Source: Asterias rubens (lineage: Eukaryota). From it: 64,000 nucleotides of DNA. The translations under genes and the position numbers were made by a program. Below, one piece after another: positions 17,521 to 64,000 of the stretch (its first letter is position 1; each line of letters opens with the position of its first letter). Below the pieces are notes generated by a model that had not been told where the DNA came from, searched no databases, and saw only the letters and a list, made by a program, of their open reading frames with translations. The stretch is from positions 806,001 through 870,000 of the forward strand of contig NC_047074.1 in NCBI RefSeq assembly GCF_902459465.1, written 5' to 3'.

Positions 17521-17712
17521 AGTCCTGAAGATTAGTAGAGTATACTGGTTGAAACGTCAAGACAACAGCTCTTCTCAAAGCCAACACTCCCCAAAAGATT
17601 TACACTTACAGAGTATGTTCGAAATGTCGAGACCACACCGGCTCTTCTTAGAGCCAACACTCCTCCCAAAAGAGATTTACAAAACAGTTGTACCCGCAAG
17701 TCTACTACTAAG
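17521..17712 (+). mobile_element. Degenerate partial-tandem copy of the hammerhead-bearing (Penelope-like pLTR/retrozyme-type) family
   Basis: CTGAAGA...GAGTATACTG..GAAACGTC at 17525-17558. A second partial copy follows (CAGAGTATGTTCGAAATGTCGAGACCACACCGGCTC...GAGCCAACACT), then the family tail AGAGATTTAC...GTTGTACCCGCAAGT shared with 47164-47276. Confidence 0.75.
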
Positions 17713-17719
17713 AGTTTAA

Positions 17720-18084
17720 AGACACTGACGCTATTGGTAATTGTCAAAGACAATGCACTTGCTGTATCTCAACAAATGCATAAAATAACAAACATGTGAT
17801 AATTTGAGCTCAATCAGTCCTCGAAAGTGCGAGATAATATTGAAAGAAAAAATACCCTTGTTACACGAAGTTGTGTGCTTTCAGATTTCGAGACCTCAAA
17901 TTCTAAATCTGAGGTCTCGAAATCAAATTTGTGGAAAATTACTTCTTTCTTGAAAACTACGATACTTCAGAGGGAGCCGTTTCTCACAATGTTTTTTACT
18001 ATCAACAGCTCTCCATTACTTGTAACCAAGTAAGTTTGTATGCTAAATTTTTTGTTGAGTAATTACCAATAGTGTCCAGTGCCT
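17720..18084 (-). mobile_element. Kolobok-type MITE, family K (full length)
   Basis: TTAA at 17716-17719 and 18085-18088; ~22-bp TIR AG(A/G)CA(C/G)TGGACACTATTGGTAA; internal hairpin TTTCGAGACCTCA...TGAGGTCTCGAAA. Homologous to 40082-40459, 29117-29276 and 56527-56822. Confidence 0.85.
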
Positions 18085-22925: not shown

Positions 22926-23516
22926 CTGGACATTTACATGGGTTTGTACAGTAAAGTTAGTTTGCTATTGGACACTGGACATTCACATGGGTTTATATAG
23001 TAAAGTTAGTTTAATATTGAACATTGGATATTGACATGGAGTTTGTGCAGTAAAGTTAGTTTGATATTGGTCATTGGACATTCGCACGGGTTTGTACAGT
23101 AAAGTTGGTTCGATATTTGATGTTGGACATTCACAATGGGTTTGTATAGTAAAGTTAGTTTGCTATTGGTCACTGGACATTCACATGGGTTTGTACAGTA
23201 AAGTTAGTTTAATATTGAACATTGGATATTGACATGGAGTTTGTGCAGTAAAGTTAGTTTGATATTGGTCATTCGACATTCGCACGGGTTTGTGCAGCGA
23301 TATTGATATTGGACATTCACAATGGGTTTGTATAGTAAAGTTAGTTTGATATTGAGCATTGGACATTCACAGATGTGTGTACAGCGAATGTCATAGTTAC
23401 TTTTTCAATATTAAACATTGGACATTAACGATGGGTTTGTATAGTCAAGTTAGTTTGATATTGGACATTGGACATTCACAATGGGTTTGTACAGTAAAGT
23501 TAGTTTAATATTGGTC
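22926..23516. repeat. Minisatellite, ~49-50-bp unit x ~12, with a higher-order 4-unit duplication
   Basis: Unit TTGGACATTCACATGGGTTTGTACAGTAAAGTTAGTTTGATATTGGACA. Diagnostic variants of units 2-5 recur in the same order in units 6-9. Confidence 0.9.
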
Positions 23517-29508: not shown

Positions 29509-30100
29509 AGGTAAAGTGTGGTAATAAATCACAACTAACTGCCCTCTAAGGTAAAGTGCGGTCACAATCACAGGACTAACTACTCTCTCATAAATCACAG
29601 GACTCCTGCCTCCTAAAATACAGTCACAATCACACGACTACTGCCTGGTCACAATCACAAGAACAACTACTGCCTCGTAAAGGTAAAGTGTGGTAACAAT
29701 CACAGGACTAATGCCTCACACAGTGTGGTCACAATCACATGACAACTGCTGCCCCTAGTGAGGTGACAATCACAGACTACTGCCTCCTAAAGGTGAAGTG
29801 AGTTCACAATCACAGGACTACTGCCTGGCCACAATTACAAGAACAACTACTACCTCCTAAAGGTAAAGTATGGTAACAATCACAGGACTAATGCCTCACA
29901 CAGTGTGGTCACAATCATATATACTGCCCCTAGTGAGGTGACAATCACAGGACTAATGCCTCACACAGTGTGGTCACAATCATATATACTGCCCCTAGTG
30001 AGGTGACAATCACAGGCTACTGCCTCCTAAAGAAAGTGAGGTCACAATCACAGAACTACTGACTCCTAGTTTGGTAATAATCACAGGACTAACTACTGTC
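29509..30100. repeat. Complex minisatellite built from ~25-45-bp modules
   Basis: About 18 recurrences of the core GTCACAATCACAGGACTACTGCCT, interleaved with AAAGGTAAAGTGTG. Contains a near-exact ~63-bp duplication at about 29879-30007. Confidence 0.85.
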
Positions 30101-33647: not shown

Positions 33648-33869
33648 GATCAGAGACCGGATCAACTCTGACCCGGGAGTGTACAATTTCTTTCAAAAAC
33701 AAACACGACATATTGAAGTTTGTTTTACAATATATGTAAACCTATCACGTGCTTTGGCGGACAAAACTCAACTATAAAGATTGTAGCATGAGAAATCAGT
33801 CTGTGAAAGTTGCTGTGGTTAAATCTTACAATTGTCACATTGCTATCCAAGATTTGGAAACAAAACGTG

Positions 33870-33912
33870 AAAATCTCTTTTGGGTAGTGTTGGTTCTGAA
33901 ATGAACCGGTAG
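33870..33912 (-). repeat. Fragment of the hammerhead-bearing family (hairpin and tail only)
   Basis: ATCTCTTTTGGGTAGTGTTGGTTCTGAAATGAACCGGT matches ATCTCTTAGGGTGAGTGTTGGCTCTGAAAAGAGCCGGT at 46101-46138. Confidence 0.6.
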
Positions 33913-34643
33913 TGAACACTGATCAAAATACTAATACGAAAACGCTATGTAATTAAAAATGAAAGATACGAGAAGCTTCGTACATGGAAATCTGGTCTTT
34001 GTTGCGAATTGAGGAGCAACCCACTCCGATAAAAATGATCTGTAAAAACAGCATGTTACGCGAATGGAGTGTATTTTTAATCTTGTAGTCAGCACAACCT
34101 CCCCACGACTCGTTTTTCCTACCGTCCAATACGACGAGATGCCGGCGTTCGCGTCCTTCCTCTACCAAGGACAAGGGGCTCGGATATAATTAAGAATCCC
34201 AAAATAGCCTTCATATAAATCCATTTAGGGTACATCGTCTTATAATGACAGGATTAAATGTTTGTATCTATTGTTCATTGAGAATAATTTGACAACATGG
34301 ATAGATTCCATCTGACATGTTCAATGGTTTAAAAAGATGGACAAAAATATGATTTGTGTGGATTAGAGTAAAAAAATTCAAAGATAATCTTGTTTAGTTT
34401 TAATCTTTCCGCGTCTTGTCGAAAAAGTAATATTACACAAATTATAAAATAAAATGTCTTGGAAATGATTTTGATGTCGTTGATTGGAATTTCCAAATTT
34501 ATTAATTGATACTTTCATGGTCACGTAGCATTCAGCTGATTTGTTATAATTATATTAATTTTCTTCAGTGGCGATATCATGACAGCTGCAACTGAATAGT
34601 ACTTGAAATTTATATATTATTGCATTTTGAAGAAAATGGATAT

Positions 34644-34925
34644 ATCAGAACTATCCAATAAAATCAAGAAATAATGACTGACAAGTGGATATTTAATTAT
34701 CACTAACAACAGAGGGGGCTTTATTAAATACATGTATCAGCAACAGCATTGAGTTGTACAGTATTAAAATTGCATTTGGGAGAAAGCATCAGAACTAGCA
34801 AATAAAATTGAGAAATATAAAACTGACAAGTGGATATTTAATTACAACCAACAACAGAAGAGAACTTAATTAAATACAAGAGCATTGAATTGTGCAGTAT
34901 TGATTAAGAAAACGAAATTTGAGCG
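34644..34925. repeat. Diverged tandem duplication, period ~144 bp
   Basis: ATCAGAACTA...AATAAAAT...ACTGACAAGTGGATATTTAATTA...AACAACAGA...ATTAAATACA...GCATTGA(G/A)TTGT.CAGTATT appears twice, starting at 34644 and 34788. Confidence 0.75.
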
Positions 34926-34938
34926 ATAGCTATAAATA

Positions 34939-35062
34939 GTAGTAAACTTATCGGTACAACCATGTAATAATTCTCTTTTGAGGGTGTGTTGGCTCTGGAA
35001 AGAGCCGGTGTGGTCTCGACGTTTGAACAGTAAACTCTGTCTTCATGAGAAAAAACTATGAA
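34939..35062 (-). mobile_element. Dispersed degenerate monomer of the hammerhead-bearing family
   Basis: Aligns end to end with 46058-46185 (GTACAACCATGT...TCTCTT...GTGTTGGCTCTGGAAAGAGCCGGTGTGGTCTCGACGTTT-GAACAGTAAACTCTG-TCTTCATGAGA). The core is mutated (minus strand ATGAAGA, G12 lost). It is followed by AAACTATGAAC, the start of another monomer. Confidence 0.8.
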
Positions 35063-37834
35063 CGAGTTTGAATCTAAAAACAGAATACCTTTTACAAACC
35101 TCCATTTATATCACCGAATAGGAATGCATGTTCAAGAAAAACAGTCCTTTGTAACATAATTCCTATTTTAATTTAGCATATCAAAATAAAATCGATAAGC
35201 ATTGACAGTTTCCCTGAAGAAACCTAATTGGTTATATTTATTGATTTGTCTTAGTAGACCACTTGATAGGCAATAACCGACGTGATTTTCAACCGATTGC
35301 TGAGGGCCCTTCAGGGTAGGGCGACGCATGCATTTTGTTGCTGGCCAACGCAGTTCTCGGTAACATGGTATTTCTTTGTATTATTTTCAAGTGGATAAAC
35401 CTTTTAAATGCTGTAAATTTTTCCACAGAACTCGGGGAAGAACTGAGTTAGGTTTCAGTGTATAAAACTACATAATATTCGTTATCTCTGATTTAAATTT
35501 AACATGTGGATTAACCTTGTCAAGAATACATTATGCAAATAGTAAAAAAAAAAAACCGGTAGTTTCAGCACCATCACTACTCAACAGAGATTTATGAACA
35601 TATTGTCACCGCAAACCCCACTCTAAACACTAACATTAAAATACAAGGCATCTGGCAGTAAAGAGATGTGTGACCGAATCTTGGCATTAATTGTTAGTCT
35701 TCTTATATTCATTGAAGGCTACAGGATTAAAACGATATTCAAATACTTGTTTTGAAAACAAATCTGAACAGCGGTTTGGGGAAGTGTTAAGTGGTTAAGT
35801 GTTCGGGCAGTTAACACACCGTAACATTTTACTTCAAAATGGACGAAATTAACACTCTTGTTACTATTCATAACACTGTAATGTTTGTAAAGTCAGTAAC
35901 TCGGCGCTGTGTTTCACACTGGCCGGCCTTTTCACACTACAAGAATTCCATACGATAACCGCGTGCATTATGCAGTTGTGTACTCTACTGAGTGTAACAA
36001 ACCGGCCCTCCCCATCTAACCCCCGCCCCACCCCCTCTAATGGATCACGTGCTAACCATTTTTAAAAAGCTTAGGCAAGAAATCTCAAGTAAAATCTAAA
36101 GTGAAGGAGGCGGTAAAGTAGTCATTAACAAACAAAGAAAACAATATAATATAGGTCTTCTAACGGTTAGCAGTAACTCACGCGTAAACCGGGTCAGGAT
36201 CGCTTAATTTAATAGCATGTCTGGACTATCTACCCCCCCCCCCCCTCTCCTTCACTACCTCCTTCAAGATAAACCCTTGACGTCAATGCTACATTTTAGT
36301 GTCTGTTTTATTTTTTTATTTTTGATAATGCAATATTTCTAGATAATGGATTGAAAATGTTTCAACCAAAAACAAAGTGAAAAATTATTTCCTCTTCGCC
36401 GACGTACGTCTGCGTATAATTAATTTAGAACCATTTGGGGTTGATATTATTTTGCTTTTAGTTAATGGCAATAAAAGGAAAGAAACGGGAGTCATTTTTT
36501 GTCTTAAATTGCTAAGTAAGTGGACAATATTGTTCCTGTAGACTATCAAGAAATAATGGAACTGGAAGATGGCGAGAAGAACCTAAAAAAATACTATTTA
36601 TTACATTATCTAGACTCGAAAGTGTTATTAAGAAAAGTGTATACAACTTACAGTGTTTTGAATAAAAACAAGGAATGAAGGTCTTGTATAACTCGGAAAG
36701 CTTCGAGATATTAAGGGTTTTGTTTTTTACTAATCGAGGAAGAAATCTTGAGACCGTTAGTCTACTTGGTTTGTTCTAAATAGTTGTCAAATGCATCTTT
36801 GTATATTATTTTTTGTCTACTGTATTTGAGAGTTGTCGCTGTTGTTGTTGCTGTTCTTGTTGATGTTTGCTGTTGACTCATATTTTATGAGAAATATATA
36901 TTTTTTTAACGCAAAAAAATCATATAAATCAATAATTGACAGCATCAATACATTTTCGCTTTCTTTGAAAATGCTGTCCTTCAACTTCAAAGAAGTTTCA
37001 TAACGGATTTGTACTGTTATTTTATTATTATTATTATTATCACTTTTTTTTAAGCTTTGAAAAAATTAACGTTTCAAAATATTGCAATGGTACCATCTTC
37101 AAGACAGGATTAAATAAAAGCATCAAGAAAAACGTTACAACTTAATTAGTCATCTTATCATCTACAATGTCATTATATTTTTAATATTCCAGAAACTGTA
37201 TAAGTGACAGTTTATGTCCTAGTTAATTGTAAAAGCAAATATCTTTAATTGATATTGCAAACTCCATTTCGTACTACATCATTCGTATTTAGGTGATACA
37301 AAAATCACCAATACGCGAAACTTTGCTAATCTTTGCATCTTCGTTAAAATAACATTAAATTGCCTTACATTGTCTTAATATGAATTGCATGAAAAGAGAA
37401 AGTCTTAATTTAAACGTTGGTAGTTTCAACATGAAATCATCAACAGACTCCATCCAAAGACATGATTCTTCATCTTTCTTATACAGTTATTTAACATCGA
37501 ACTCATCAGTCCAATCGTAAAGGACTAAAATTCACAAAATGGCTACAAACAACCAGAGTCTGTCCAGCCTAGGGATACGGTTGAATTAAACTTGGCCCGC
37601 ACGTAGAAAGATTTCCTAAGTCTTTGGGCTTCCGATCACCAAAACCAATCCAATCAAATGCCAGAGTGGTATCTCCGGGGATAGCACACGCCCTGAGCGG
37701 ACTAAAAACATACTTGGGTTCTACTGGTCCGTTCCCTATTCCCCACGAGACGACAATCCAATCTTATTACATGTGTACCATCTCTGCTTCAGGGGAAAGA
37801 AGAAAAAAGTTTCAGTGAGTTGATAGAGGGAAAG

Positions 37835-45500: not shown

Positions 45501-46110
45501 TTTTGTTGTGTAAATATGGTTTAAATTAATTAAATTACTTCTAATTCTGCTGACCCTAACAGCTACATCCACTGAGAATCGTCCCCTTTCTAAGCAACGT
45601 TTGTTCAATTTGTGTTTACTTACGATTCTGTTTACTGCGCCGAGCGGTAAAATGGTGTTAACATGTAACAGTTAACATCAGTCAACTTCACTTGATGTAG
45701 GACTATTGTGACACTAGGTGGCAGTATTATGTCACATATCCCCCGCCCCCCCCCCCCCTCAATCGAGCCAGTAATTTCACTCATTAAAATAACTAGAATG
45801 TCATTACAAAACCCATTGTTTTACGCACATTATGTGAAAAGACCATTGCCTCGAAAAGAACAGCTGATTGATTTTTATCTCAATATTATTCCAACTACAG
45901 AGTGCTCTATAGTTATTCACTGAGTGACACTTGTACTGCATAAAAAATGAAATGAGTTATGGAATTTGTAATAATATAGTAATTTTGACTTGGTTGCACT
46001 ATTTTTTGTTTATTTTTCTGTCAGAAATCAGGTGAAAACAGCTACTGTGATAAGAAGAAACTATGAACAATAGTGAACTTGTGGGTACAACCATGTGTAA
46101 ATCTCTTAGG

Positions 46111-47160
46111 GTGAGTGTTGGCTCTGAAAAGAGCCGGTTGGGTCTCGACGTTTCGAACAGTATACTTTGCTCGTCTTCAGGAGAGCAGAGTGTTGGCTCT
46201 GAAAAGAGCCGGTTGGGTCTCGACGTTTCGAACAGTATACTTTGCTCGTCTTCAGGAGAGCAGAGTGTTGGCTCTGAAAAGAGCCGGTTGGGTCTCGACG
46301 TTTCGAACAGTATACTTTGCTCGTCTTCAGGAGAGCAGAGTGTTGGCTCTGAAAAGAGCCGGTGTGGTCTCGACGTTTCGAATAGGATACTCTGCTCGTC
46401 TTCAGGAGAGCAGAGTGTTGGCTCTGAAAAGAGCCGGTGTGGTCTCGACGTTTCGAATAGGATACTCTGCTCGTCTTCAGGAGAGCAGAGTGTTGGCTCT
46501 GAAAAGAGCCGGTTGGGTCTCGACGTTTCGAATAGGATACTCTGCTCGTCTTCAGGAGAGCAGAGTGTTGGCTCTGAAAAGAGCCGGTGTGGTCTCGACG
46601 TTTCGAATAGGATACTCTGCTCGTCTTCAGGAGAGCAGAGTGTTGGCTCTGAAAAGAGCCGGTTGGGTCTCGACGTTTCGAATAGGATACTCTGCTCGTC
46701 TTCAGGAGAGCAGAGTGTTGGCTCTGAAAAGAGCCGGTTGGGTCTCGACGTTTCGAACAGTATACTTTGCTCGTCTTCAGGAGAGCAGAGTGTTGGCTCT
46801 GAAAAGAGCCGGTTGGGTCTCGACGTTTCGAACAGTATACTTTGCTCGTCTTCAGGAGAGCAGAGTGTTGGCTCTGAAAAGAGCCGGTTGGGTCTCGACG
46901 TTTCGAACAGTATACTTTGCTCGTCTTCAGGAGAGCAGAGTGTTGGCTCTGAAAAGAGCCGGTTGGGTCTCGACGTTTCGAACAGTATACTTTGCTCGTC
47001 TTCAGGAGAGCAGAGTGTTGGCTCTGAAAAGAGCCGGTTGGGTCTCGACGTTTCGAACAGTATACTTTGCTCGTCTTCAGGAGAGCAGAGTGTTGGCTCT
47101 GAAAAGAGCCGGTTGGGTCTCGACGTTTCGAACAGTATACTTTGCTCGTCTTCAGGATAT
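46111..47160. repeat. Tandem array, 14 x 75 bp
   Basis: Unit CAGAGTGTTGGCTCTGAAAAGAGCCGGTTGGGTCTCGACGTTTCGAACAGTATACTTTGCTCGTCTTCAGGAGAG starting at 46111+75k (k=0-13); three sequence variants. Confidence 0.98.
46143..47159 (-). ncRNA. 14 tandem minimal type I hammerhead ribozyme motifs (first at 46143-46184, then every 75 nt)
   Basis: Minus strand: stem I 5' UCUC; core CUGAAGA; extra C; stem II GAGCA(AAGUAUAC)UGUUC; GAAA; palindromic ACGU stem III; cleavage triplet GUC; stem I 3' GAGA. All invariant core nucleotides are present in all 14 units. In the unit at 47086-47160 the 5' stem I strand is UAUC and pairs less well. Confidence 0.8.
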
Positions 47161-49397
47161 CTCCAGAGTATACTGTTCGAAACGTCGATACCCAATCGGC
47201 TCTTTTCAGAGCCAACACTCACCTTAAGAGATTTACACATGGTTGTATCCGCAAGTTTACTATTTATTCATAGTTTATTCTTATTTCTCCACACCATGCA
47301 AAGCTTCAAACAATACTTAGCTACTCTGATGGTGCATGTGTTAACAACGAAGAAAGCTCGCTGAATGCTAAAATCGTTTCTAACTCTGAGAATTGGGTGC
47401 AGCATGGGTGCAGTAACAACTTCAGTTATCAGAATGTATTTATTCATCTATATAATTTTACATAATTATTTTAAATTCCAGATTTCTAACGTTTCGTTAT
47501 TTTTTTATCAAGTTGATTGTTTTATAATCAATTCAATCGCATTTTTGTCCGCCAAGTAACATTTTGTAGAACTGACTGGATTTATGTCAGGGAGGAAACA
47601 AAGACAATATTCTGATGAACACCACATACAAACAGAAATAAATAATATTGCGTTATCAATCCAAAAGTTATAGCTTTCTAAATTTAGGAGAGAAAAAAAT
47701 CGGCGTCCCAAAGCCAAGACTCCGAGGTTTCACCACGGTTCGAGAGAGCCTCAGACGGCGCTGTAGCCTTGAACTCCCTCACAACCAAACAATGACGACC
47801 CGCTGCGTCCGAACAATACCGGAGAGAAAAAAAGATGTCCGGGAAAATATCAAGCCTTCTACTCTCATTTAAATCACAAAGACATAAATATATCCCTTCG
47901 ACTGCTTGAATTTCCATTCTCTTTGGTCATTTACCTGTACTCAGCATCTGTACGTAACTGAATTCCGAACGAAAATGTATTGGTCATGGCTTGCAATACA
48001 ATGCTACGAAATTAAACAAGGAGAGGTCCTGAGCCGACAAAGGATCACGCAAATAAAACTATAAGATACAAAATAGATTAACAACGATGCTTGACTAACT
48101 TTCACCAGACATTTTTTGTGATGAGTAGGTTTTGATCAATTTGATTTAAAGCTTTGAGTCTATTCTTCTTTTATGTCATGCGAGAGGGAACATGTAAATT
48201 TATTTTCTTTCATACTTCTCGCAGGTTAATTTTGTATGCGTTAGAGGAAAGTAACGCATTGACAAGCTTGTGAAATTATTGTTATAGTTGAGTGAAGTCC
48301 AATGGGAACCTTTGGCTTTCGCCCCGAATTTTTTATATTTTTCTGATCTCGACCATAAAGTAAAATCGTTTTCTCCTCATGCACGACCTTTGCTTTCAAT
48401 AAAGAATATGACTAGATCTAACATTGTGAGGGTATTTGTAAACTGTTAATGTGACGTACATAATTGGCTGTGTGTAGAGTTTTTTTTTTTAGCAATCACC
48501 TAGTTTTCATTTTAAACATTCCTAATCTGTGACCATTTTATTTAATTAGATGGTCAGATGCAAGAAGCCGTATTGAGAAAGTGTGACAATTTGCGACAAG
48601 AAGCCACAGCTCGTCGATTCAAAAGTAATTTTTTAAAAACTTACAGAAAGCGCACGTGCGTAAACAGGGTACCAGACCATAGACTGCACATTATTTTGGT
48701 TATACTGTATAATTATTTGGGTGAGTCAGACACCCTTGAACATGGCAGTATTTTAGACAAACTGGAACTTCTCAATGACAATTATTGATACAGGGAACCT
48801 CTACGAAAAACTGCAAAAAATTACTCACAATTTCTTTCTTTGCAATCACAATTTAAACATTATACGTGTATTTACGGTGATAAAATGAAAAATCGGGAAT
48901 GTATTACTTTCCAAATCTTCAACTCCACTACCCCACGTCTCATTTTCTTTTGAATTGAAAGTCTTAACATATCACAGTCCGCAATATTATAGGAAGTAAC
49001 AGATAAAGTCTTTCACGGTAGGGACAAAAGTAGTAGTAGAATTGCAAACACAAGAGGTCGCTGGTCATCTCCCACTAAGAAAAACATTGAAGCTGGTCTC
49101 GATATCATACTAGTTTAACATCAATGACTAAATTTAGAGGATTCTTTTGAAATCTATCACTTGATTAATCGAAGCCAGGGATTTCCTGTTCTTTTAAATC
49201 GGACGCAAAAACAATTTAGGTGAAACTAGGACCTGTGCTATAATGTCACATTCTATATTCATCTTGAACGAGAAAAATCACCGATACAATATTGATGCAT
49301 ACAGCCTGGCGGCGTTTCAACACAAAAAGACATAATATCTCGGAAGACTGGACAATAATTAGACATCGCTCTAGCGCCCTCACACAACTCATGAACA

Positions 49398-59800: not shown

Positions 59801-62180
59801 TTTTTCTTTTAAAACGCAGTGCGAAAACTCATGAATAATATGCACCATTTTCCTCTCATCTAAACCCTCGACAAAAACAAGAGATAAGGATAGTGGAGAA
59901 ACAGCCACTTGAAATAAGCTGTCTTTACTTTTGTAATTGCTTTCAGTATTTAGCCAGCTAAATCAGTACATAGTTTCAAAGGGTTTTTCAATAGGACCGA
60001 ATGACCGCTTTTGATGAACCTGCCAGAAACCACCAAGCGCTTTGCACGCGGCATTGAACAGCACTGAGCAGCTAAGAATAGAGCTTACGAGGATAGAGTT
60101 TTCTATTCCTTTTGTTCTCCTATCTAATGAAAGCAACACATGGCTTTTTCTAGAGTTACTTGTGTCTATTGTGCTCCCCCAAATTGGAAATAATTCGGGG
60201 CATTCATAGTCCGGCGACCGCCGAGCGGGTCGTGAATGGGATATCGACGGGGGCTTTTGAAGAGTTATCCCCGGTGCGAAGAGGGAGTGAATGCTCGCTC
60301 TATTCACGACGATTCAGCTTTCAACTAAAGGGTCTGTTCAGTGGTTTTCTCAGCAGTGGTACCCAACAATGGAATGAATAGACGGGAGGACAAAAAGACC
60401 GTGTTCAGATTAGATAGATTGAATAGTAATTAGCATTTCTAAGGAGAATCCGGTGGGCTGCTCCCCGTCCCAACCTACCATCATGGTGTCATTTAAGAAC
60501 ATCTCTGTTCATGATGTTTTTACAGTGTTGGATGCCATTAGACTAAAAGATTAAAATACAGCATTGTCTCAGATTTTTCGTAGCCTATACAGCTTCATTT
60601 TTTTGTGTGAAAACCTCATTTTGAGAACTTTCTTTTCATTATGTATTTACAGTGTTAGATGCCTTAAGTGTATCAGATTTTCTTTTACAGTTTCACTGTT
60701 TTGAAAACCTCTGCTTGAAAATAACTCTTCTTAACCCAAGGGGATTTTTATCAGAAAACCTCAAAAGGATATGTAAATAATATTGTTTATAAACTTATCC
60801 CCCAAGCTAGACTTAAAGCTTAATTCAATTTGAAAAGAAATCATGTATCAATTAAGATTTTTGTTAAATTTGATCGAGTGTACAAAGGTTGGGTTTGGCT
60901 TAGGGTTGGAGGAGGGATAACTTTTTTATGTATACAATGGTGCCTGTCTAAACGGTTTGAATATAGTCGAACAGAAACAAGTTATTTGCGCTAGTCTTGT
61001 TTTGCCTTTCCTTGCAATATTATTTCTTTTCATCTGATGGAGTAGTTGTTGCTACGAAAGCTCATTTATTTTTTAGTGTGTAATTACTTAGTTTGTCAGG
61101 GCTAACTAACACGGTTCTTCTTTTGGTCATCAATTTTGATTTGGAGAAAAGATTCTTCTATGTTTGAAAGTAACTCACCTTTACGTCTTTCAACTTCCCT
61201 TGTCAACTAGATCGGTAGTCGGTTGGACGCCCGAAAATTAGTTGACAAAATGTTGTAAAAAGGTTGAGATGTCCTGTCACAGAATGTACATTTTGATCTT
61301 CAAAGCAATAACACCATTTGGCACACAAGATTTTGAATTATTTTCACCCATTTCTGTGCGAGCTGAAAATACCGTTTAACTGGAGGATTCGAAATGGGGT
61401 AAACATAATCAGTGAATCTTCGTTGACAACATAAAAACAAACTTCTTTAAAAAGAACTGTAGCCTCAACGATCCAGACATGACGTACAAAAAATGCATAT
61501 TTGTTTCAAAATAGAAGTGTTTTTCTGTTTAGTTTGGGTTTCTTATTTTCGCATAGCGACCCAGATACATGTAAATGGTACACTTGCCCATAAAAGACTT
61601 CCTTTAAACATTTCAATATGGATTCTTTGTGCCAGTTTGAATCGGCCAGCGATACAAATCTGGCTTTTCACTCCCGGACAAAAGTGACAAAACACCCCAA
61701 CGAAAAGGGGACTGTGAGAGATTCGAAAGTTTCAGCCGGTGTTTTGTGTCCAAAGTATTTTTCTTCTAGTCCTTGAGAAGGGCTTGTTGTCCACATGGAA
61801 TTTGTCCAACTATGGTCTCTTTTTATTGCTTTGTATTGTGATGTTTTTAAGAGTGGTATGTGGAATGCCACACGTAACAGCTTATAGATTGAGCAACTAT
61901 TTTCAGACGCTTAATGCACTTGTATGTATTTCCTTTTAAAATGTAGAATTGGAACTGCACATGAAGTCAACATTTATTATAAAATTGCAATGATGAGTTG
62001 TGACGATTTGAGTAAGATATATGGCAGAAAAGTTAACATGTATTTGGTTGTCTAGTCATGACTGACAGATGTGTCCTAAACAAATTGATTGGTTTGGGTC
62101 CTTTTGATGTCTGATCGCAAAAAGAAACTATCAATAAATTGTAAACTTGCGGGTAGAACCGTAAATTTCTTTTATGGAAA

Positions 62181-62235
62181 TGTTGTTTCTGGAAAGAGCC
62201 GGTGTGGTATCGACGTTTCGAAGAGTATCAGGAGA
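62181..62235 (-). mobile_element. Short degenerate fragment of the hammerhead-bearing family
   Basis: TGTTGTTTCTGGAAAGAGCCGGTGTGGTATCGACGTTTCGAAGAGTATCAGGAG. Keeps GAAACGTC (minus strand) but has a deletion through stem II and the AGA of the core. Confidence 0.65.
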
Positions 62236-64000
62236 AGCTCTTATGTTTTGAAACTTCCGAACAAGGGAAAGTGTTCGGTAATCGCTCGGCAACAATCTTG
62301 TACCTTGTTAGAAGTATAGCAGTTTTCGATAGTATAAATCATATTGAGAATCATTTCACGATGAAGTCATGTGGTTGTGGAAAAGATAGCAGTTTTGTCC
62401 ACACAAAAGTTTAATCTGGGAAACGTTACTGTCATAAACGTTTCTCAGGTGCATTCCAGTTACGGATTATTCTTCCTGTATGGTGGATTTTTGACGATGT
62501 CTAAAAAACAGTAACACCCTTTGAACTTCAATATAGGAAGATAATTTAATTATTTGGAAGAAACCTGTGAGCGCGTGTTCATATATCTTCGTGAACCACT
62601 GTCGGTAGCTATACTGGGACTATAAAATGCTGCAGCAAATCGTTGGTTGTTTGGTAACAAATTAACACATTTGTAAGAATTTAATACTATCACCTTTAAA
62701 ACAGTGGTACACACCCAACAAAATTATCTTTGGTCTTCTCACTTTGGTGACCAAAGTCAACTGCATGTATGTTTCAATTAAGTAAAAAAACCAACATGGA
62801 ATTAAAAGGAAACACGGGTTGTTTGCAGACGTGTTCATCTTTAACCAGGAAAAAGCGCCAACTCAATTCACAACTTTCTAAGGAAACAAACCCCTTCAGC
62901 TGTCCGCCTATTCATTGACCCACAATGCCTTGACTAATCGTGTCATTGTTTAGGCCTTTACTTTGTGTGCAACAACCAAAAAGAGCTAAACCTAAAAAAC
63001 CTTGAGTTGTCACTTATTCAGTGCTTACTGATGGACAAGAATCACTAAAAGAAACAATCAAATACCGCACTCTCAACAAGCTTCGAAAAGCGCGAACGAT
63101 TGCCTGGGTCCCAACTGCGTCCGATTCACCATTAAATTGTAACATTTTAATTTGAGACTCGGGTTTAATCGCCGCTCCAAGTGGTGTATTTTCACCCTCT
63201 AAACAGTCCCCCTGATATATATTTTTTCTCTCCCTTGTACTTACACTTTGAATCGATCTTCTGTTAGGTGTTTTGGTAGTGGGTTTAGCTTCCGCCCCAT
63301 TGACAACGCGGCCAGTCTGCTGTACAAATCCACCCCGGATTGCTTTTGTCCCCTTTGCAAACTTCAATAGCTTGCCTATTGAGCCAGGCACAATAACCAC
63401 ACCTAACTATTCATGCTGGTCTATTCACAGTGGTTTAGTCTTATTTACTCCAGCCAAGGCCGGGCTATTCATCGTTGAATATATCCTCTAGCGTTTATTA
63501 TCATGCATATTACTAAGTATTAACCCTTCATTGTCCGTGCTTCATTTAAATCCTTTTCAGCAGTGAACAGCTCTTCGCAATCTGCCTTTCATCTATTTAT
63601 TTATGTCATACGTGCCTATTGAGTATCCCCGTGTTTTTTTATTGTGTTGTTATTTTATGCCTATTCGGTTATTTTTCTTTTATATAATTACCGCTCATGG
63701 GGTGAAGTAAAAAAGAAAAGCTTTAAGCGCTCTTAGATTGCATAGCAATGACTTGGCTATTCATGCCTTTTATACTTGTGTTTGGGTTGCTTTTGTGGAG
63801 TGAAGAATAGCGATGGTACACAATGCGTAACAGGCCAAGAAAACAAGTTTTAAGCTTTTTCTTTCTACGAAAGCACCACTGTGGAATGAAGTAATGCCCC
63901 TTTGAATCAGGCTTTATAGAATAGTGCAGCGTCTGTGAAGTAGAAAAGGGAAAGTAAAATGCACCCGCGCTCAAATAATCACAACACACCATTTTATGAC

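What the first reader, a model, noticed from the sequence alone, without database searches (positions are those of the whole stretch)
46111..47160. Array of 14 minimal hammerhead ribozymes with a 75-nt period: candidate ultra-small retrozyme/circular RNA template
Seen in sequence: on the minus strand each 75-nt unit reads UCUC-CUGAAGA-C-GAGCA(AAGUAUAC)UGUUC-GAAA-CG-UC^GAGA. That gives the full hammerhead core, a 4-bp stem I, a 5-bp stem II and a loopless palindromic ACGU stem III. Predicted cuts fall between + coordinates 46147/46146 and every 75 nt after. Established knowledge: minimal type I hammerheads with a palindromic stem III occur in Penelope-like element pLTRs and work as dimers (double hammerhead). 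Tandem hammerhead satellites in animals (newt satellite 2, schistosome SM-alpha, metazoan non-LTR retrozymes) are processed into monomer and circular RNAs, and the monomers I know of are well over 100 nt. Inference: neighbouring units can supply the dimer partner in cis. A minus-strand transcript would then self-process into the 75-nt monomer GAGACCCAACCGGCUCUUUUCAGAGCCAACACUCUGCUCUCCUGAAGACGAGCAAAGUAUACUGUUCGAAACGUC, with 5'-OH and 2',3'-cyclic phosphate ends that RtcB could circularise. The array itself could be the product of rolling-circle reverse transcription of such a circle. Caveat: one extra C sits between the core and stem II.
Basis: partly seen in the sequence, partly recalled or inferred. 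Interest (0 to 1): 0.92.

Follow-up and report, generated by a model that had tools for sequence, protein, structure and literature searches.

The report
Penelope retroelement tail amplified into hammerhead array
The 75-base repeat is a real array of hammerhead-ribozyme motifs, but it is a locally amplified piece of the 3' tail of a Penelope-like retrotransposon, a known kind of element; its one unusual feature is that each unit also carries a perfect copy of the stem-loop that normally ends histone mRNAs.

Summary
**Observation confirmed.** The predicted cut sites are correct.

**What it is.**
- The unit is not a free-standing satellite. It belongs to an interspersed family: four more copies lie in the window and more than 26 in metagenome contigs.
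- The family is the 3' tail of a Penelope-like element (PLE). In longer copies the motif lies about 30 nt after an RT/GIY-YIG ORF.
- The motif meets every published hallmark of PLE minimal hammerheads. The "extra C" is one of those hallmarks.
- The window locus is a single insertion flanked by a target-site duplication, with typical PLE architecture: an inverted 5'-truncated copy and a 34-nt extension at one end.

**Why the retrozyme reading is not supported.**
- The units have no private substitutions, while the two arms are 7.5% diverged. The array was therefore amplified or homogenised as DNA after the insertion.
- The array-specific junction creates a hairpin that outcompetes the hammerhead fold by 5-14 kcal/mol.
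- No second such array was found.
- Tandem hammerhead repeats of 51-972 bp derived from PLE pLTRs are already described.

Each unit carries a canonical histone 3' stem-loop. The full tail adds a purine box at the spacing seen in real H2B genes.

The parts
46040..46049 (.). Left copy of the target-site duplication (AGCTACTGTG)
   Evidence: It abuts the element end and matches 47319-47328 at 9 of 10 positions. The chance of such a match in the simulation is about 0.003.
46050..46112 (-). Complete 3' tail of the direct-orientation PLE copy. It follows the last stem-loop and includes the purine box AAGAGA.
   Evidence: Alignment A1; homology to metagenome copies; arm alignment.
46113..47157 (-). 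Array of 13.9 units of 75 nt. Each unit is a PLE min-hammerhead motif plus a histone-type stem-loop. There are four unit types arranged in blocks.
46143..46184 (-). Example min-hammerhead that passes the descriptor: UCUC-CUGAAGA-C-GAGCA(loop)UGUUC-GAAACGUC-GAGA. Predicted cut between 46147 and 46146.
   Evidence: Seven further passing units lie at 46218-46259, 46293-46334, 46743-46784, 46818-46859, 46893-46934, 46968-47009 and 47043-47084.
46097..46140 (-). Histone-type 3' signal of the last unit: stem-loop GGCUCUUUUCAGAGCC, flank AACAC and purine box
   Evidence: Rfam RF00032, 28.7 bits, E 1.2e-05. Internal units score 23.6-23.8 bits. Calibration against real H2B 3' ends.
47157..47163 (-). 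Short junction or filler (GAGATAT on the minus strand) between the 5'-most, truncated array unit and the inverted copy
47164..47284 (+). Inverted, 5'-truncated copy of the same PLE tail. It starts inside stem II of the hammerhead and includes the stem-loop and the full tail.
   Evidence: Inverted repeat I1; 92.5% identity to the direct arm over 120 nt; Rfam RF00032 hit at 47193-47238 (+), 27.2 bits.
47285..47318 (+). 34-nt extension present at one end only. The same extension occurs in many metagenome copies and in L122.
   Evidence: It matches the '30- to 40-bp extension (tail)' of PLE insertions described in PMC8557442.
47319..47328 (.). Right copy of the target-site duplication (AGCTACTCTG)
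17521..17729 (+). Diverged family copy. It is itself a partial tandem of two truncated units joined at a different junction.
33834..33933 (-). Diverged, strongly 5'-truncated family copy. Its stem-loop has a compensatory C-G to U-A change.
34905..35063 (-). Diverged family copy with a decayed core (AUGAAGA, CAAAC)
62099..62245 (-). Diverged family copy. It keeps GCTTCTCC upstream of the position of the core box.

Best explanation
The locus at 46050-47318 is one old insertion of a 5'-truncated, endonuclease-positive Penelope-like element (PLE). It is laid down in that class's characteristic form:
- an inverted 5'-truncated copy next to a direct copy;
- a 34-nt extension at one end;
- a 10-bp target-site duplication.

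The 75-nt unit is a slice of the element's 3' untranslated tail. It holds the PLE minimal type I hammerhead (no helix III loop, one unpaired nucleotide after A9) and, 11 nt after the cleavage site, a histone-type stem-loop.

**How the array arose (inferred).** A founding tandem of this slice was probably made by template switching of the PLE reverse transcriptase during insertion. The array was then expanded and homogenised to about 14 units by DNA-level unequal exchange or slippage.

**What it does (inferred).** The hammerhead is a genuine member of the PLE family by sequence. In the array, however, the new junction pairs with stem II and hides the catalytic box, so any minus-strand transcript should cleave poorly. 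The array is best seen as a PLE-derived minisatellite that is retrozyme-like in form, not a demonstrated source of 75-nt circular RNA.

**Shown:** anatomy, family membership and relative dating. **Inferred:** the two-step origin and the low activity.
For: **The unit belongs to an interspersed PLE family**
- Four more copies lie in the window, with a shared 3' end and variable 5' ends. More than 26 copies occur in metagenome contigs.
- In L010 the motif lies about 30 nt after an ORF with a Pfam GIY-YIG domain (28.8 bits, above the cut-off of 22.6).
- Full-length homologues of 788-889 aa have RVT_1 ending exactly where the match to L010 begins.

**The motif is a PLE min-hammerhead**
- In the native context the hammerhead fold is essentially the minimum-free-energy structure.
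- PLEs that are 35% and 48% identical (L125 and L127, the latter from the sea urchin Lytechinus variegatus) keep the same plan with compensatory changes in helices I and II.

**The insertion architecture is PLE-typical**
- Target-site duplication, inverted arm and a one-sided 34-nt extension shared with other copies. These match the description in PMC8557442.
- The inverted-plus-direct arrangement recurs in L030, L033, L100, L011 and L069.

**Dating**
- The arms are 92.5% identical. The 13 full units have 5 variable columns, 4 types and no singletons. The probability of that is about 1e-16 if the units were as old as the arms. A two-unit block (types cB, aB) is repeated.

**Founding step**
- Units 2-14 carry UGCUCUCC, which is authentic PLE sequence upstream of the box. 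The 5'-most unit is cut at CCUGAAGA, so the later units cannot be DNA copies of it.
- The 17.5-kb copy is an independent partial tandem with a different junction.

**Folding**
- In the array the hammerhead fold costs +4.8 kcal/mol (variant A) or +14.1 (variant B). The double hammerhead costs +14.5 or +32.4.
Against: - No expression or cleavage data exist, and thermodynamic predictions do not rule out co-transcriptional or protein-assisted cleavage.
- The dating assumes the two arms were identical at insertion.
- The CCACACC linker variant in three units equals the consensus of other family copies. That could mean several RNA templates or gene conversion, not in-situ mutation.
- Covariation within the family itself is uninformative: 90.5% of cells are paired, no better than shuffles.
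- No Rfam hammerhead model hits, even at E<=10. Those models expect a helix III that min-hammerheads lack.
- The window copy has no PLE ORF of its own.
Confidence: 0.7

Rival explanations
1. Active or recently active non-LTR retrozyme. Minus-strand transcripts self-cleave as double hammerheads into 75-nt monomers. A tRNA ligase circularises them, and a PLE reverse transcriptase copies the circles by rolling circle into new tandem arrays.
For: - Tandem type I hammerhead repeats are the operational definition of animal retrozymes, which are PLE-related (PMC7229834; 2026 preprint).
- The unit retains exactly the ribozyme plus one structured hairpin.
- The cut-to-cut distance is exactly 75 nt in all units.
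- The nested double-hammerhead pairing between neighbouring units is possible.
- The CCACACC variant matches other family members, which would fit several templates.
Against: - Only one such array lies in the 64-kb window.
- The junction is absent from the 126 fetched loci, which include more than 26 family copies.
- The array continues into a full linear tail that a 75-nt circle would not contain, inside one TSD-flanked insertion.
- There are no private substitutions and the variants form blocks, which points to DNA-level amplification.
- The active fold is strongly disfavoured. Five units have a stem II mismatch and one lacks helix I.
- PLE min-hammerheads cleave poorly in vitro even as dimers.
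Confidence: 0.15
2. The whole array was made in one step at insertion, by repeated end-to-end template jumping of the PLE reverse transcriptase. The templates would be short RNAs whose 3' ends were produced near the stem-loop by histone-type processing. The array has since been kept uniform by gene conversion.
For: - The unit's 3' boundary lies 7 nt after the stem, close to where histone pre-mRNAs are cut. That cleavage position is established knowledge of the pathway and was not tested here.
- The 5'-most unit is truncated, as expected for the last-synthesised cDNA.
- PLE insertions are known for complex tandem and inverted structures.
- A second, unrelated repeat family in the metagenomes shows 32-nt arrays of the same stem-loop.
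Against: - It needs a discrete RNA 5' end about 10 nt upstream of the ribozyme, for which there is no evidence.
- The 17.5-kb partial tandem has its junction after the purine box, not at the processing site.
- The repeated two-unit block is explained more simply by unequal exchange.
Confidence: 0.1
3. An inert satellite whose resemblance to a hammerhead is coincidental.
For: No Rfam hammerhead hit. No covariation signal within the family.
Against: - The descriptor gives 8 hits against 0 in 200 shuffles.
- The same motif follows RT/GIY-YIG ORFs in three PLE lineages, with compensatory helix changes.
- All published hallmarks are met.
Confidence: 0.03

Closest known systems
Minimal hammerhead ribozymes of metazoan Penelope-like elements (Cervera & de la Pena 2014, PMC4209133)
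   Same: Type I topology; CUGANGA / GAAA / UH boxes; an unpaired nucleotide between A9 and G10.1; the G10.1-C11.1 pair; palindromic 15.2-16.2 with no loop 3; helix I of 4 bp; helix II of 5-6 bp. The motif lies just after an RT/GIY-YIG ORF in the terminal repeat region. Dual motifs on opposite strands, and many truncated single copies, also occur.
   Different: Here a 75-nt slice containing the motif is itself tandemly repeated 14 times, and the ribozyme is followed 11 nt later by a histone-type stem-loop. I did not find that feature described for PLEs.
Animal non-LTR retrozymes (Cervera & de la Pena 2020, PMC7229834; Li, Clavereau & Pollet 2026 preprint)
   Same: Head-to-tail repeats, each with a type I hammerhead; low GC; sequence kinship with PLE terminal regions. 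The monomer length falls inside the computational range of 51-972 bp.
   Different: The experimentally characterised retrozymes are 170-400 nt, occur as many dispersed arrays and are seen as circular RNAs. Here there is one array, embedded in an ordinary PLE insertion, with signs of DNA-level amplification and a predicted inactive fold. Mobility and circles are unshown.
Hammerhead satellites: newt satellite 2, Schistosoma Sm-alpha, cave-cricket pDo500 (recalled from memory, also cited in PMC4209133)
   Same: Tandem or dispersed repeats carrying type I hammerheads with a weak helix III that act as dimers.
   Different: Their units are over 300 nt with a small helix III loop and loop-loop contacts. 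This unit is 75 nt with a loopless helix III.
3' end signal of replication-dependent histone mRNAs (Rfam RF00032; stem-loop plus histone downstream element)
   Same: The 16-nt stem-loop is identical to the metazoan consensus. The 3' flank AACAC is the same as in genuine H2B genes from the same metagenomes. In the full tail an AAAGAGA box sits 12 nt after the stem, at the same offset as in those genes.
   Different: It follows a retrotransposon ORF and a ribozyme, not a histone ORF. Scores are just under Rfam's gathering value. The internal array units lack the downstream box.
Transposon-derived minisatellites and satellites (general phenomenon; established knowledge)
   Same: An internal segment of a mobile element amplified in place, with block-wise homogenised variants.
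   Different: The amplified segment here happens to be a ribozyme plus a protein-binding hairpin.

Membership tests
PLE minimal hammerhead ribozyme | Catalytic boxes CUGANGA, GAAA and U-H at the cleavage site, in type I order | tested here: met
   Present in all 14 units and in the family consensus.
PLE minimal hammerhead ribozyme | One unpaired nucleotide between A9 and G10.1, and a G10.1-C11.1 pair | tested here: met
   C in this family, C in L127 and U in L125. G-C is the first pair of helix II in all three. The hallmark is stated in PMC4209133.
PLE minimal hammerhead ribozyme | Palindromic 15.2-16.2 with no helix III loop (dimer-forming) | tested here: met
   ACGU in every unit.
PLE minimal hammerhead ribozyme | Helix I of 4-5 bp and a contiguous helix II of at least 4 bp | tested here: inconclusive
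   Met in 8 of 14 array units and in the family consensus (6-bp helix II). Five variant-B units have a C.A mismatch and the 5'-most unit lacks helix I.
PLE minimal hammerhead ribozyme | Located in the terminal repeat or 3' region of an element encoding RT plus GIY-YIG endonuclease | tested here: met
   Shown for family members L010, L077, L039, L066 and L108 and via homologues. The window copy itself is a truncated tail with no ORF.
PLE minimal hammerhead ribozyme | Helices supported by compensatory changes | tested here: met
   Uninformative within the family. Across three PLE lineages: helix II GAGCAG/CUGUUC, GGACAG/CUGUCC and GAGGA/UCCUC; helix I UCUC/GAGA, ACUC/GAGU and ACC/GGU.
PLE minimal hammerhead ribozyme | Self-cleavage at the predicted site | not testable with these tools
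   Needs in vitro transcription. The literature reports low activity for metazoan PLE min-hammerheads.
Rfam hammerhead families (e.g. RF00163) | Covariance-model match | tested here: not met
   No hammerhead family appears at the gathering score or at E<=10. This is expected, because those models include a helix III hairpin that min-hammerheads lack.
Animal non-LTR retrozyme | Head-to-tail repeats, each carrying a type I hammerhead | tested here: met
Animal non-LTR retrozyme | The repeat unit is itself mobile, with several independent arrays sharing the same unit | tested here: inconclusive
   There is one array in 64 kb. The junction has no matches in the 126 fetched loci or in the viral and prokaryotic collections. 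The source genome could not be searched.
Animal non-LTR retrozyme | Expressed as linear and circular monomer RNAs | not testable with these tools
   No transcriptome is available. The active fold is predicted to be disfavoured.
Penelope-like element insertion | 5' truncation, an adjacent inverted 5'-truncated copy, a 30-40 bp extension at one end, partial tandems | tested here: met
   Criteria come from PMC8557442.
Histone mRNA 3' processing signal | 6-bp stem and 4-nt loop matching GGYYYU-UHUN-ARRRCC | tested here: met
   16/16 identity to GGCUCUUUUCAGAGCC at 15 sites. With up to 2 mismatches the pattern matches 17 sites in the window, against 0.04 expected.
Histone mRNA 3' processing signal | Purine-rich downstream element about 12-15 nt after the stem | tested here: inconclusive
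   Present in the full tail and both end copies at the same offset as in genuine H2B genes. Absent from the internal array units.
Histone mRNA 3' processing signal | Rfam RF00032 gathering score of 34 bits | tested here: not met
   Window 23.6-28.7 bits; family tails 29.8-32.1. Genuine H2B ends with the same AACAC flank also score only 32.7-33.4 in three of four contigs.
Histone mRNA 3' processing signal | Binding by SLBP and U7-dependent cleavage | not testable with these tools
   Needs binding and processing assays, or 3' end mapping.

The most novel reading that the evidence does not exclude
This Penelope-like lineage has taken over the complete 3'-end signal of replication-dependent histone mRNAs: the stem-loop, the host-type flank and the U7-binding purine box. 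It sits 11 nt downstream of the element's hammerhead cleavage site. Some of the element's RNA would then be matured, stabilised or translated through SLBP and U7 instead of polyadenylation, possibly coupling the element to S phase. The 75-nt array would encode a string of ribozyme plus SLBP-site modules. I found no report of a transposon using this pathway. A second, unrelated multi-copy ORF in the metagenomes also ends 3 nt before such a stem-loop.
Probability: 0.3. Interest if true: 0.75.

Novelty: new variant of a known kind. Interest (0 to 1): 0.5.

Why it matters
As a hammerhead array, this is one more example of something already described: tandem repeats of Penelope-type minimal hammerheads, which are now regarded as non-autonomous PLE derivatives.

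Its value is as a clean dissection. One locus shows the PLE insertion architecture, an RT-level founding tandem and later DNA-level amplification. That warns against reading every tandem hammerhead array as a product of rolling-circle reverse transcription.

The less expected point is the histone-type stem-loop and downstream box fused to the ribozyme in the element's tail. [quoted passage not shown] If the signal works in the element, a retrotransposon using the same pathway would open a testable link between transposon expression, SLBP/U7 and the cell cycle. It would also give a handle on the still obscure life cycle of PLEs.

Tried and rejected
- **Rfam.** The gathering-score scan of the whole window gave no hits. 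The permissive scan gave no hammerhead family. The MIR7533 hit is only the long hairpin formed by the inverted arm and the first unit, and the snoU82P hits are noise.
- **Window ORFs.** Pfam found nothing in the ten longest ORFs outside the array. The 370-433 aa ORFs across the array are artefacts of a 25-codon repeat.
- **Promoter and terminator scan.** It uses bacterial consensus patterns and is not relevant to this eukaryotic DNA.
- **Within-family covariation.** Uninformative, because the copies are too similar.
- **Collection scans.** The array junction was not found in viral or prokaryotic collections, and the family pattern was not found in prokaryotic genomes. These collections do not hold animal genomes, so the negatives carry little weight.
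- **Homologue context.** L121 and L123 end at the ORF. L124 ends inside a possible GAAACGUC motif. P0023 is not on record.
- **L069.** Its large ORF is a host gene with an ARA70 domain, not the element.
- **Class-B repeat ORFs.** No Pfam hit. Their Tc1/mariner-like C-terminus is only my recollection.
- **L127 hairpin.** It scores only 12.7 bits for RF00032, so I do not count it as evidence for conservation of the histone-type signal.
- **Host species.** The source of the window was not identified.
Full report
**1. The observation**

Tandem Repeats Finder reports a single array at 46113-47157 with period 75, 13.9 copies, 98% matches and no indels. On the minus strand, each unit has the order stem I strand, CUGAAGA, one C, a stem II hairpin, GAAACGUC, then GAGA.

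Splitting at GUC|GAGA gives 13 full units of exactly 75 nt.

A loose pattern (CUGANGA, 8-38 nt, GAAAC) matches 16 times in the window against 1.1 expected, and 14 of the matches are in the array.

I also wrote a stricter descriptor following the published min-hammerhead logic. It requires:
- helix I of at least 4 bp;
- 0 or 1 bulged nucleotide after A9;
- helix II of at least 4 bp starting with G-C;
- GAAA, a palindromic 15.2-16.2, then U-H.

It gives 8 hits in the window and none in 200 Markov-shuffled windows. The five variant-B units fail on a C.A mismatch in stem II, and the 5'-most unit lacks the helix I strand.

**2.

No Rfam family reaches its gathering score anywhere in the window. In a permissive scan of the region no hammerhead model appears at all. 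Instead, every unit hits the histone 3' stem-loop model RF00032.

The hairpin GGCUCUUUUCAGAGCC is identical to the canonical metazoan histone stem-loop. It occurs exactly at 15 sites here, and with up to 2 mismatches the pattern matches 17 sites in the window against 0.04 expected. Two of these stem-loops, one on each strand, point outward from the array. They lie in inverted arms of about 100-120 nt.

**3. The unit belongs to an interspersed family**

nhmmer and blastn with the last unit plus its flank find four more diverged copies in the window: 17521-17729 (+), 33834-33933 (-), 34905-35063 (-) and 62099-62245 (-). They share a common 3' end but start at different 5' points (alignment A1). 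That is the signature of 5'-truncated retroelement copies.

I then scanned metagenome contigs with a 22-mer taken from the stem-loop and its 3' flank, which is neutral with respect to the ribozyme. They fall into three groups:
- this family;
- a second repeat family with tandem histone-type stem-loops;
- genuine histone H2B 3' ends.

The family consensus upstream of the stem-loop is UUCUC-CUGAAGA-C-GAGCAG(AGUAUA)CUGUUC-GAAACGUC-GAGACC.

**4. The family is the tail of a Penelope-like element (PLE)**

- Five contigs share homology for up to about 850 nt upstream of the stem-loop.
- In L010 that region is an ORF ending about 30 nt before the CUGAAGA box. It has a Pfam GIY-YIG domain (28.8 bits, above the cut-off of 22.6).
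- An exhaustive phmmer search gives 12,327 homologues. The 788-889 aa ones match only in their C-terminal third, and their RVT_1 domain ends where that match begins. RT followed by GIY-YIG is the architecture of endonuclease-positive PLEs (PMC4209133; PMC8557442).

**5. Comparison with published PLE hammerheads**

Cervera and de la Pena describe metazoan PLE min-hammerheads as follows:
- helix I of 4-5 bp;
- a long helix II;
- no helix III loop, with palindromic 15.2-16.2;
- a conserved G10.1-C11.1 pair;

They also report that these ribozymes cleave only as dimers or trimers, and weakly.

Within this young family, covariation is uninformative. Two more distant PLEs provide it:
- L125 has AACC-CUGAAGA-U-GAGGA...UCCUC-GAAACGUC-GGU.
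- L127, from the sea urchin Lytechinus variegatus, has ACUC-CUGAAGA-C-GGACAG...CUGUCC-CAAACGUC-GAGU.

Both keep the same plan with compensatory changes in both helices. In the native L010 context the minimum-free-energy structure is the hammerhead fold plus the stem-loop. The absence of Rfam hammerhead hits is expected, because those models include a helix III hairpin.

**6. Architecture of the window locus**

The composite 46050-47318 is flanked by AGCTACTGTG (46040-46049) and AGCTACTCTG (47319-47328). The chance of such a match is about 0.003. Read on the minus strand from its 5' end, and so from high to low + coordinates, it contains:
- a 34-nt extension (47285-47318) that many other family copies also carry;
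- an inverted copy truncated inside stem II (47164-47284);
- a 7-nt junction;
- the array;
- a complete tail (46050-46112).

Craig et al. describe PLE insertions in exactly these terms: strong 5' truncation, partial tandems, an adjacent inverted 5'-truncated copy, and a 30-40 bp extension often at one end only. The inverted-plus-direct arrangement recurs in L030, L033, L100, L011 and L069. No PLE body adjoins the array, since homology to other copies stops at the extension.

**7. How the array arose**

Two observations point to two steps.

- **A founding tandem made at the RNA/cDNA level.** Units 2-14 carry UGCUCUCC upstream of the box. This is authentic PLE sequence (compare GCTTCTCC in the 62-kb copy and GCATTCTCC in L010). 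The 5'-most unit is cut at CCUGAAGA. The later units therefore cannot be DNA duplicates of the first one, and at least a founding tandem was copied from a longer template. This fits the partial tandems that the PLE reverse transcriptase makes. The 17.5-kb copy is an independent partial tandem with a different junction.
- **Later amplification as DNA.** The two arms differ at 9 of 120 positions plus one indel. The 13 full units show only 5 variable columns, 4 unit types and no private substitution. If the units were as old as the arms, about 2.8 private changes per unit would be expected, and the probability of seeing none is about 1e-16. The variants lie in blocks and a two-unit block is repeated. 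The present array was therefore expanded or homogenised as DNA after the insertion.

A one-shot rolling-circle cDNA is also hard to reconcile with the array running seamlessly into a full linear tail.

**8. Would it cleave?**

The array-specific junction creates ACUCUGCUC, which pairs with GAGCAGAGU of stem II and puts the CUGAAGA box in a hairpin loop. A UCGA/UCGA hairpin also covers GAAAC-GUC.

| Fold compared with the MFE | Variant A | Variant B |
|---|---|---|
| Single hammerhead | +4.8 kcal/mol | +14.1 kcal/mol |
| Nested double hammerhead (two units) | +14.5 kcal/mol | +32.4 kcal/mol |

In the native PLE context the cost of the single hammerhead fold is only +2.5 kcal/mol. Both array variants differ from the family consensus by changes that weaken stem II, with no compensation. 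These are predictions, not measurements, but they argue against efficient processing.

**9. The retrozyme question**

By form, tandem type I hammerheads are what the literature calls non-LTR retrozymes.
- The characterised examples are 170-400 nt.
- A 2026 preprint reports computational consensus lengths of 51-972 bp, with a 98-bp average in coelacanth. It also shows that retrozymes are sister to PLE pLTRs.

So 75 nt is not unprecedented and the PLE link is already published. The evidence that would make this unit a mobile retrozyme, namely other arrays with the same junction, was not found in the 126 fetched loci or in the two other collections. The source genome itself could not be searched.

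**10. The histone-type signal**

In the full tail, the stem-loop is followed by AACAC, seven nucleotides, then AAAGAGA. Genuine H2B genes in the same metagenomes have the same stem-loop, the same AACAC and AAAGAGAGA at the same offset.

RF00032 scores, against a gathering score of 34 bits:

| Sequence | Bits |
|---|---|
| Genuine H2B 3' ends with the AACAC flank (L016, L036, L075) | 32.7-33.4 |
| Genuine H2B 3' end in L046 | 37.2 |
| PLE tails in metagenome loci | 29.8-32.1 |
| The two end copies in the window | 27.2-28.7 |
| Internal array units (no purine box) | 23.6-23.8 |

The signal is family-specific. L125 lacks it, and L127 has only a weak look-alike (12.7 bits) that I do not count.

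The DNA copies include about 100 nt beyond the stem-loop. The RNA used for retrotransposition therefore cannot be the processed form. If the signal is used at all, it would more likely serve an mRNA fate. This is inference.

Five literature searches found no report of a transposon with this signal.

**11. Verdict**

- The array and the motif are real.
- The motif is a member of the PLE min-hammerhead family.
- The locus is an ordinary PLE insertion in which a ribozyme-plus-stem-loop slice became a minisatellite.
- The claims of a new ultra-small retrozyme and a rolling-circle origin are not supported, though not formally excluded.
- The histone-type 3' signal in the element's tail is the feature most worth following up.

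Noticed in passing
L024:2617-2868 and about 55 other metagenome loci (e.g. L079, L020, L041); arrays in L095, L101, L082, L017: A second, unrelated multi-copy repeat. It has a decayed ORF ending ...QWRKRLRACVKAKGHHFEHLLN, with its stop codon 3 nt before a histone-type stem-loop, followed by a second stem-loop (L024 2823-2868 scores 34.7 bits, above Rfam's gathering score). Some contigs carry arrays of the stem-loop with a 32-nt period. There is no Pfam hit. The C-terminus resembles Tc1/mariner transposases only from my memory.
   Followed up: partly
L016, L036, L046, L075: These metagenome contigs are histone gene clusters with several RF00032 stem-loops and a U2 snRNA gene each (175-184 bits). 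They served as genuine controls for the histone signal.
   Followed up: partly
window 17521-17729 (+): This family copy is itself a partial tandem. One unit is truncated just after the purine box and joined to a second unit that starts inside stem II. It is an independent example of tail-internal tandem formation.
   Followed up: partly
window 47088-47220: The inverted arm and the first array unit form a near-perfect hairpin (57-nt arms, 95% complementary, 19-nt loop). This explains the spurious MIR7533 hit. Any transcript across it would be double-stranded.
   Followed up: no
window 22927-23514 and 29624-30091: Two other tandem arrays with nested periods (50/99/198 nt and 35/65/180 nt). They appear unrelated to this family.
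   Followed up: no
window 45999-47364: Four ORFs of 370-433 aa on both strands span the array. They are artefacts of a stop-free repeat of 75 nt (25 codons), not genes.
   Followed up: yes
L127:4338-4380 (Lytechinus variegatus, GCA_018143015.1): About 120 nt after the hammerhead of a 48%-identical PLE lies AGUCCU-UUUC-AGGACU followed by CAAGAAAGA. I recall that box as the sea-urchin histone downstream element. Rfam scores the site at only 12.7 bits, so it remains just a lead.
   Followed up: partly
L069:67-2367: A 766-aa ORF with an ARA70 (nuclear coactivator) domain lies next to a diverged family copy. It is a host animal gene, which shows that these 'metagenome' contigs are host DNA.
   Followed up: no
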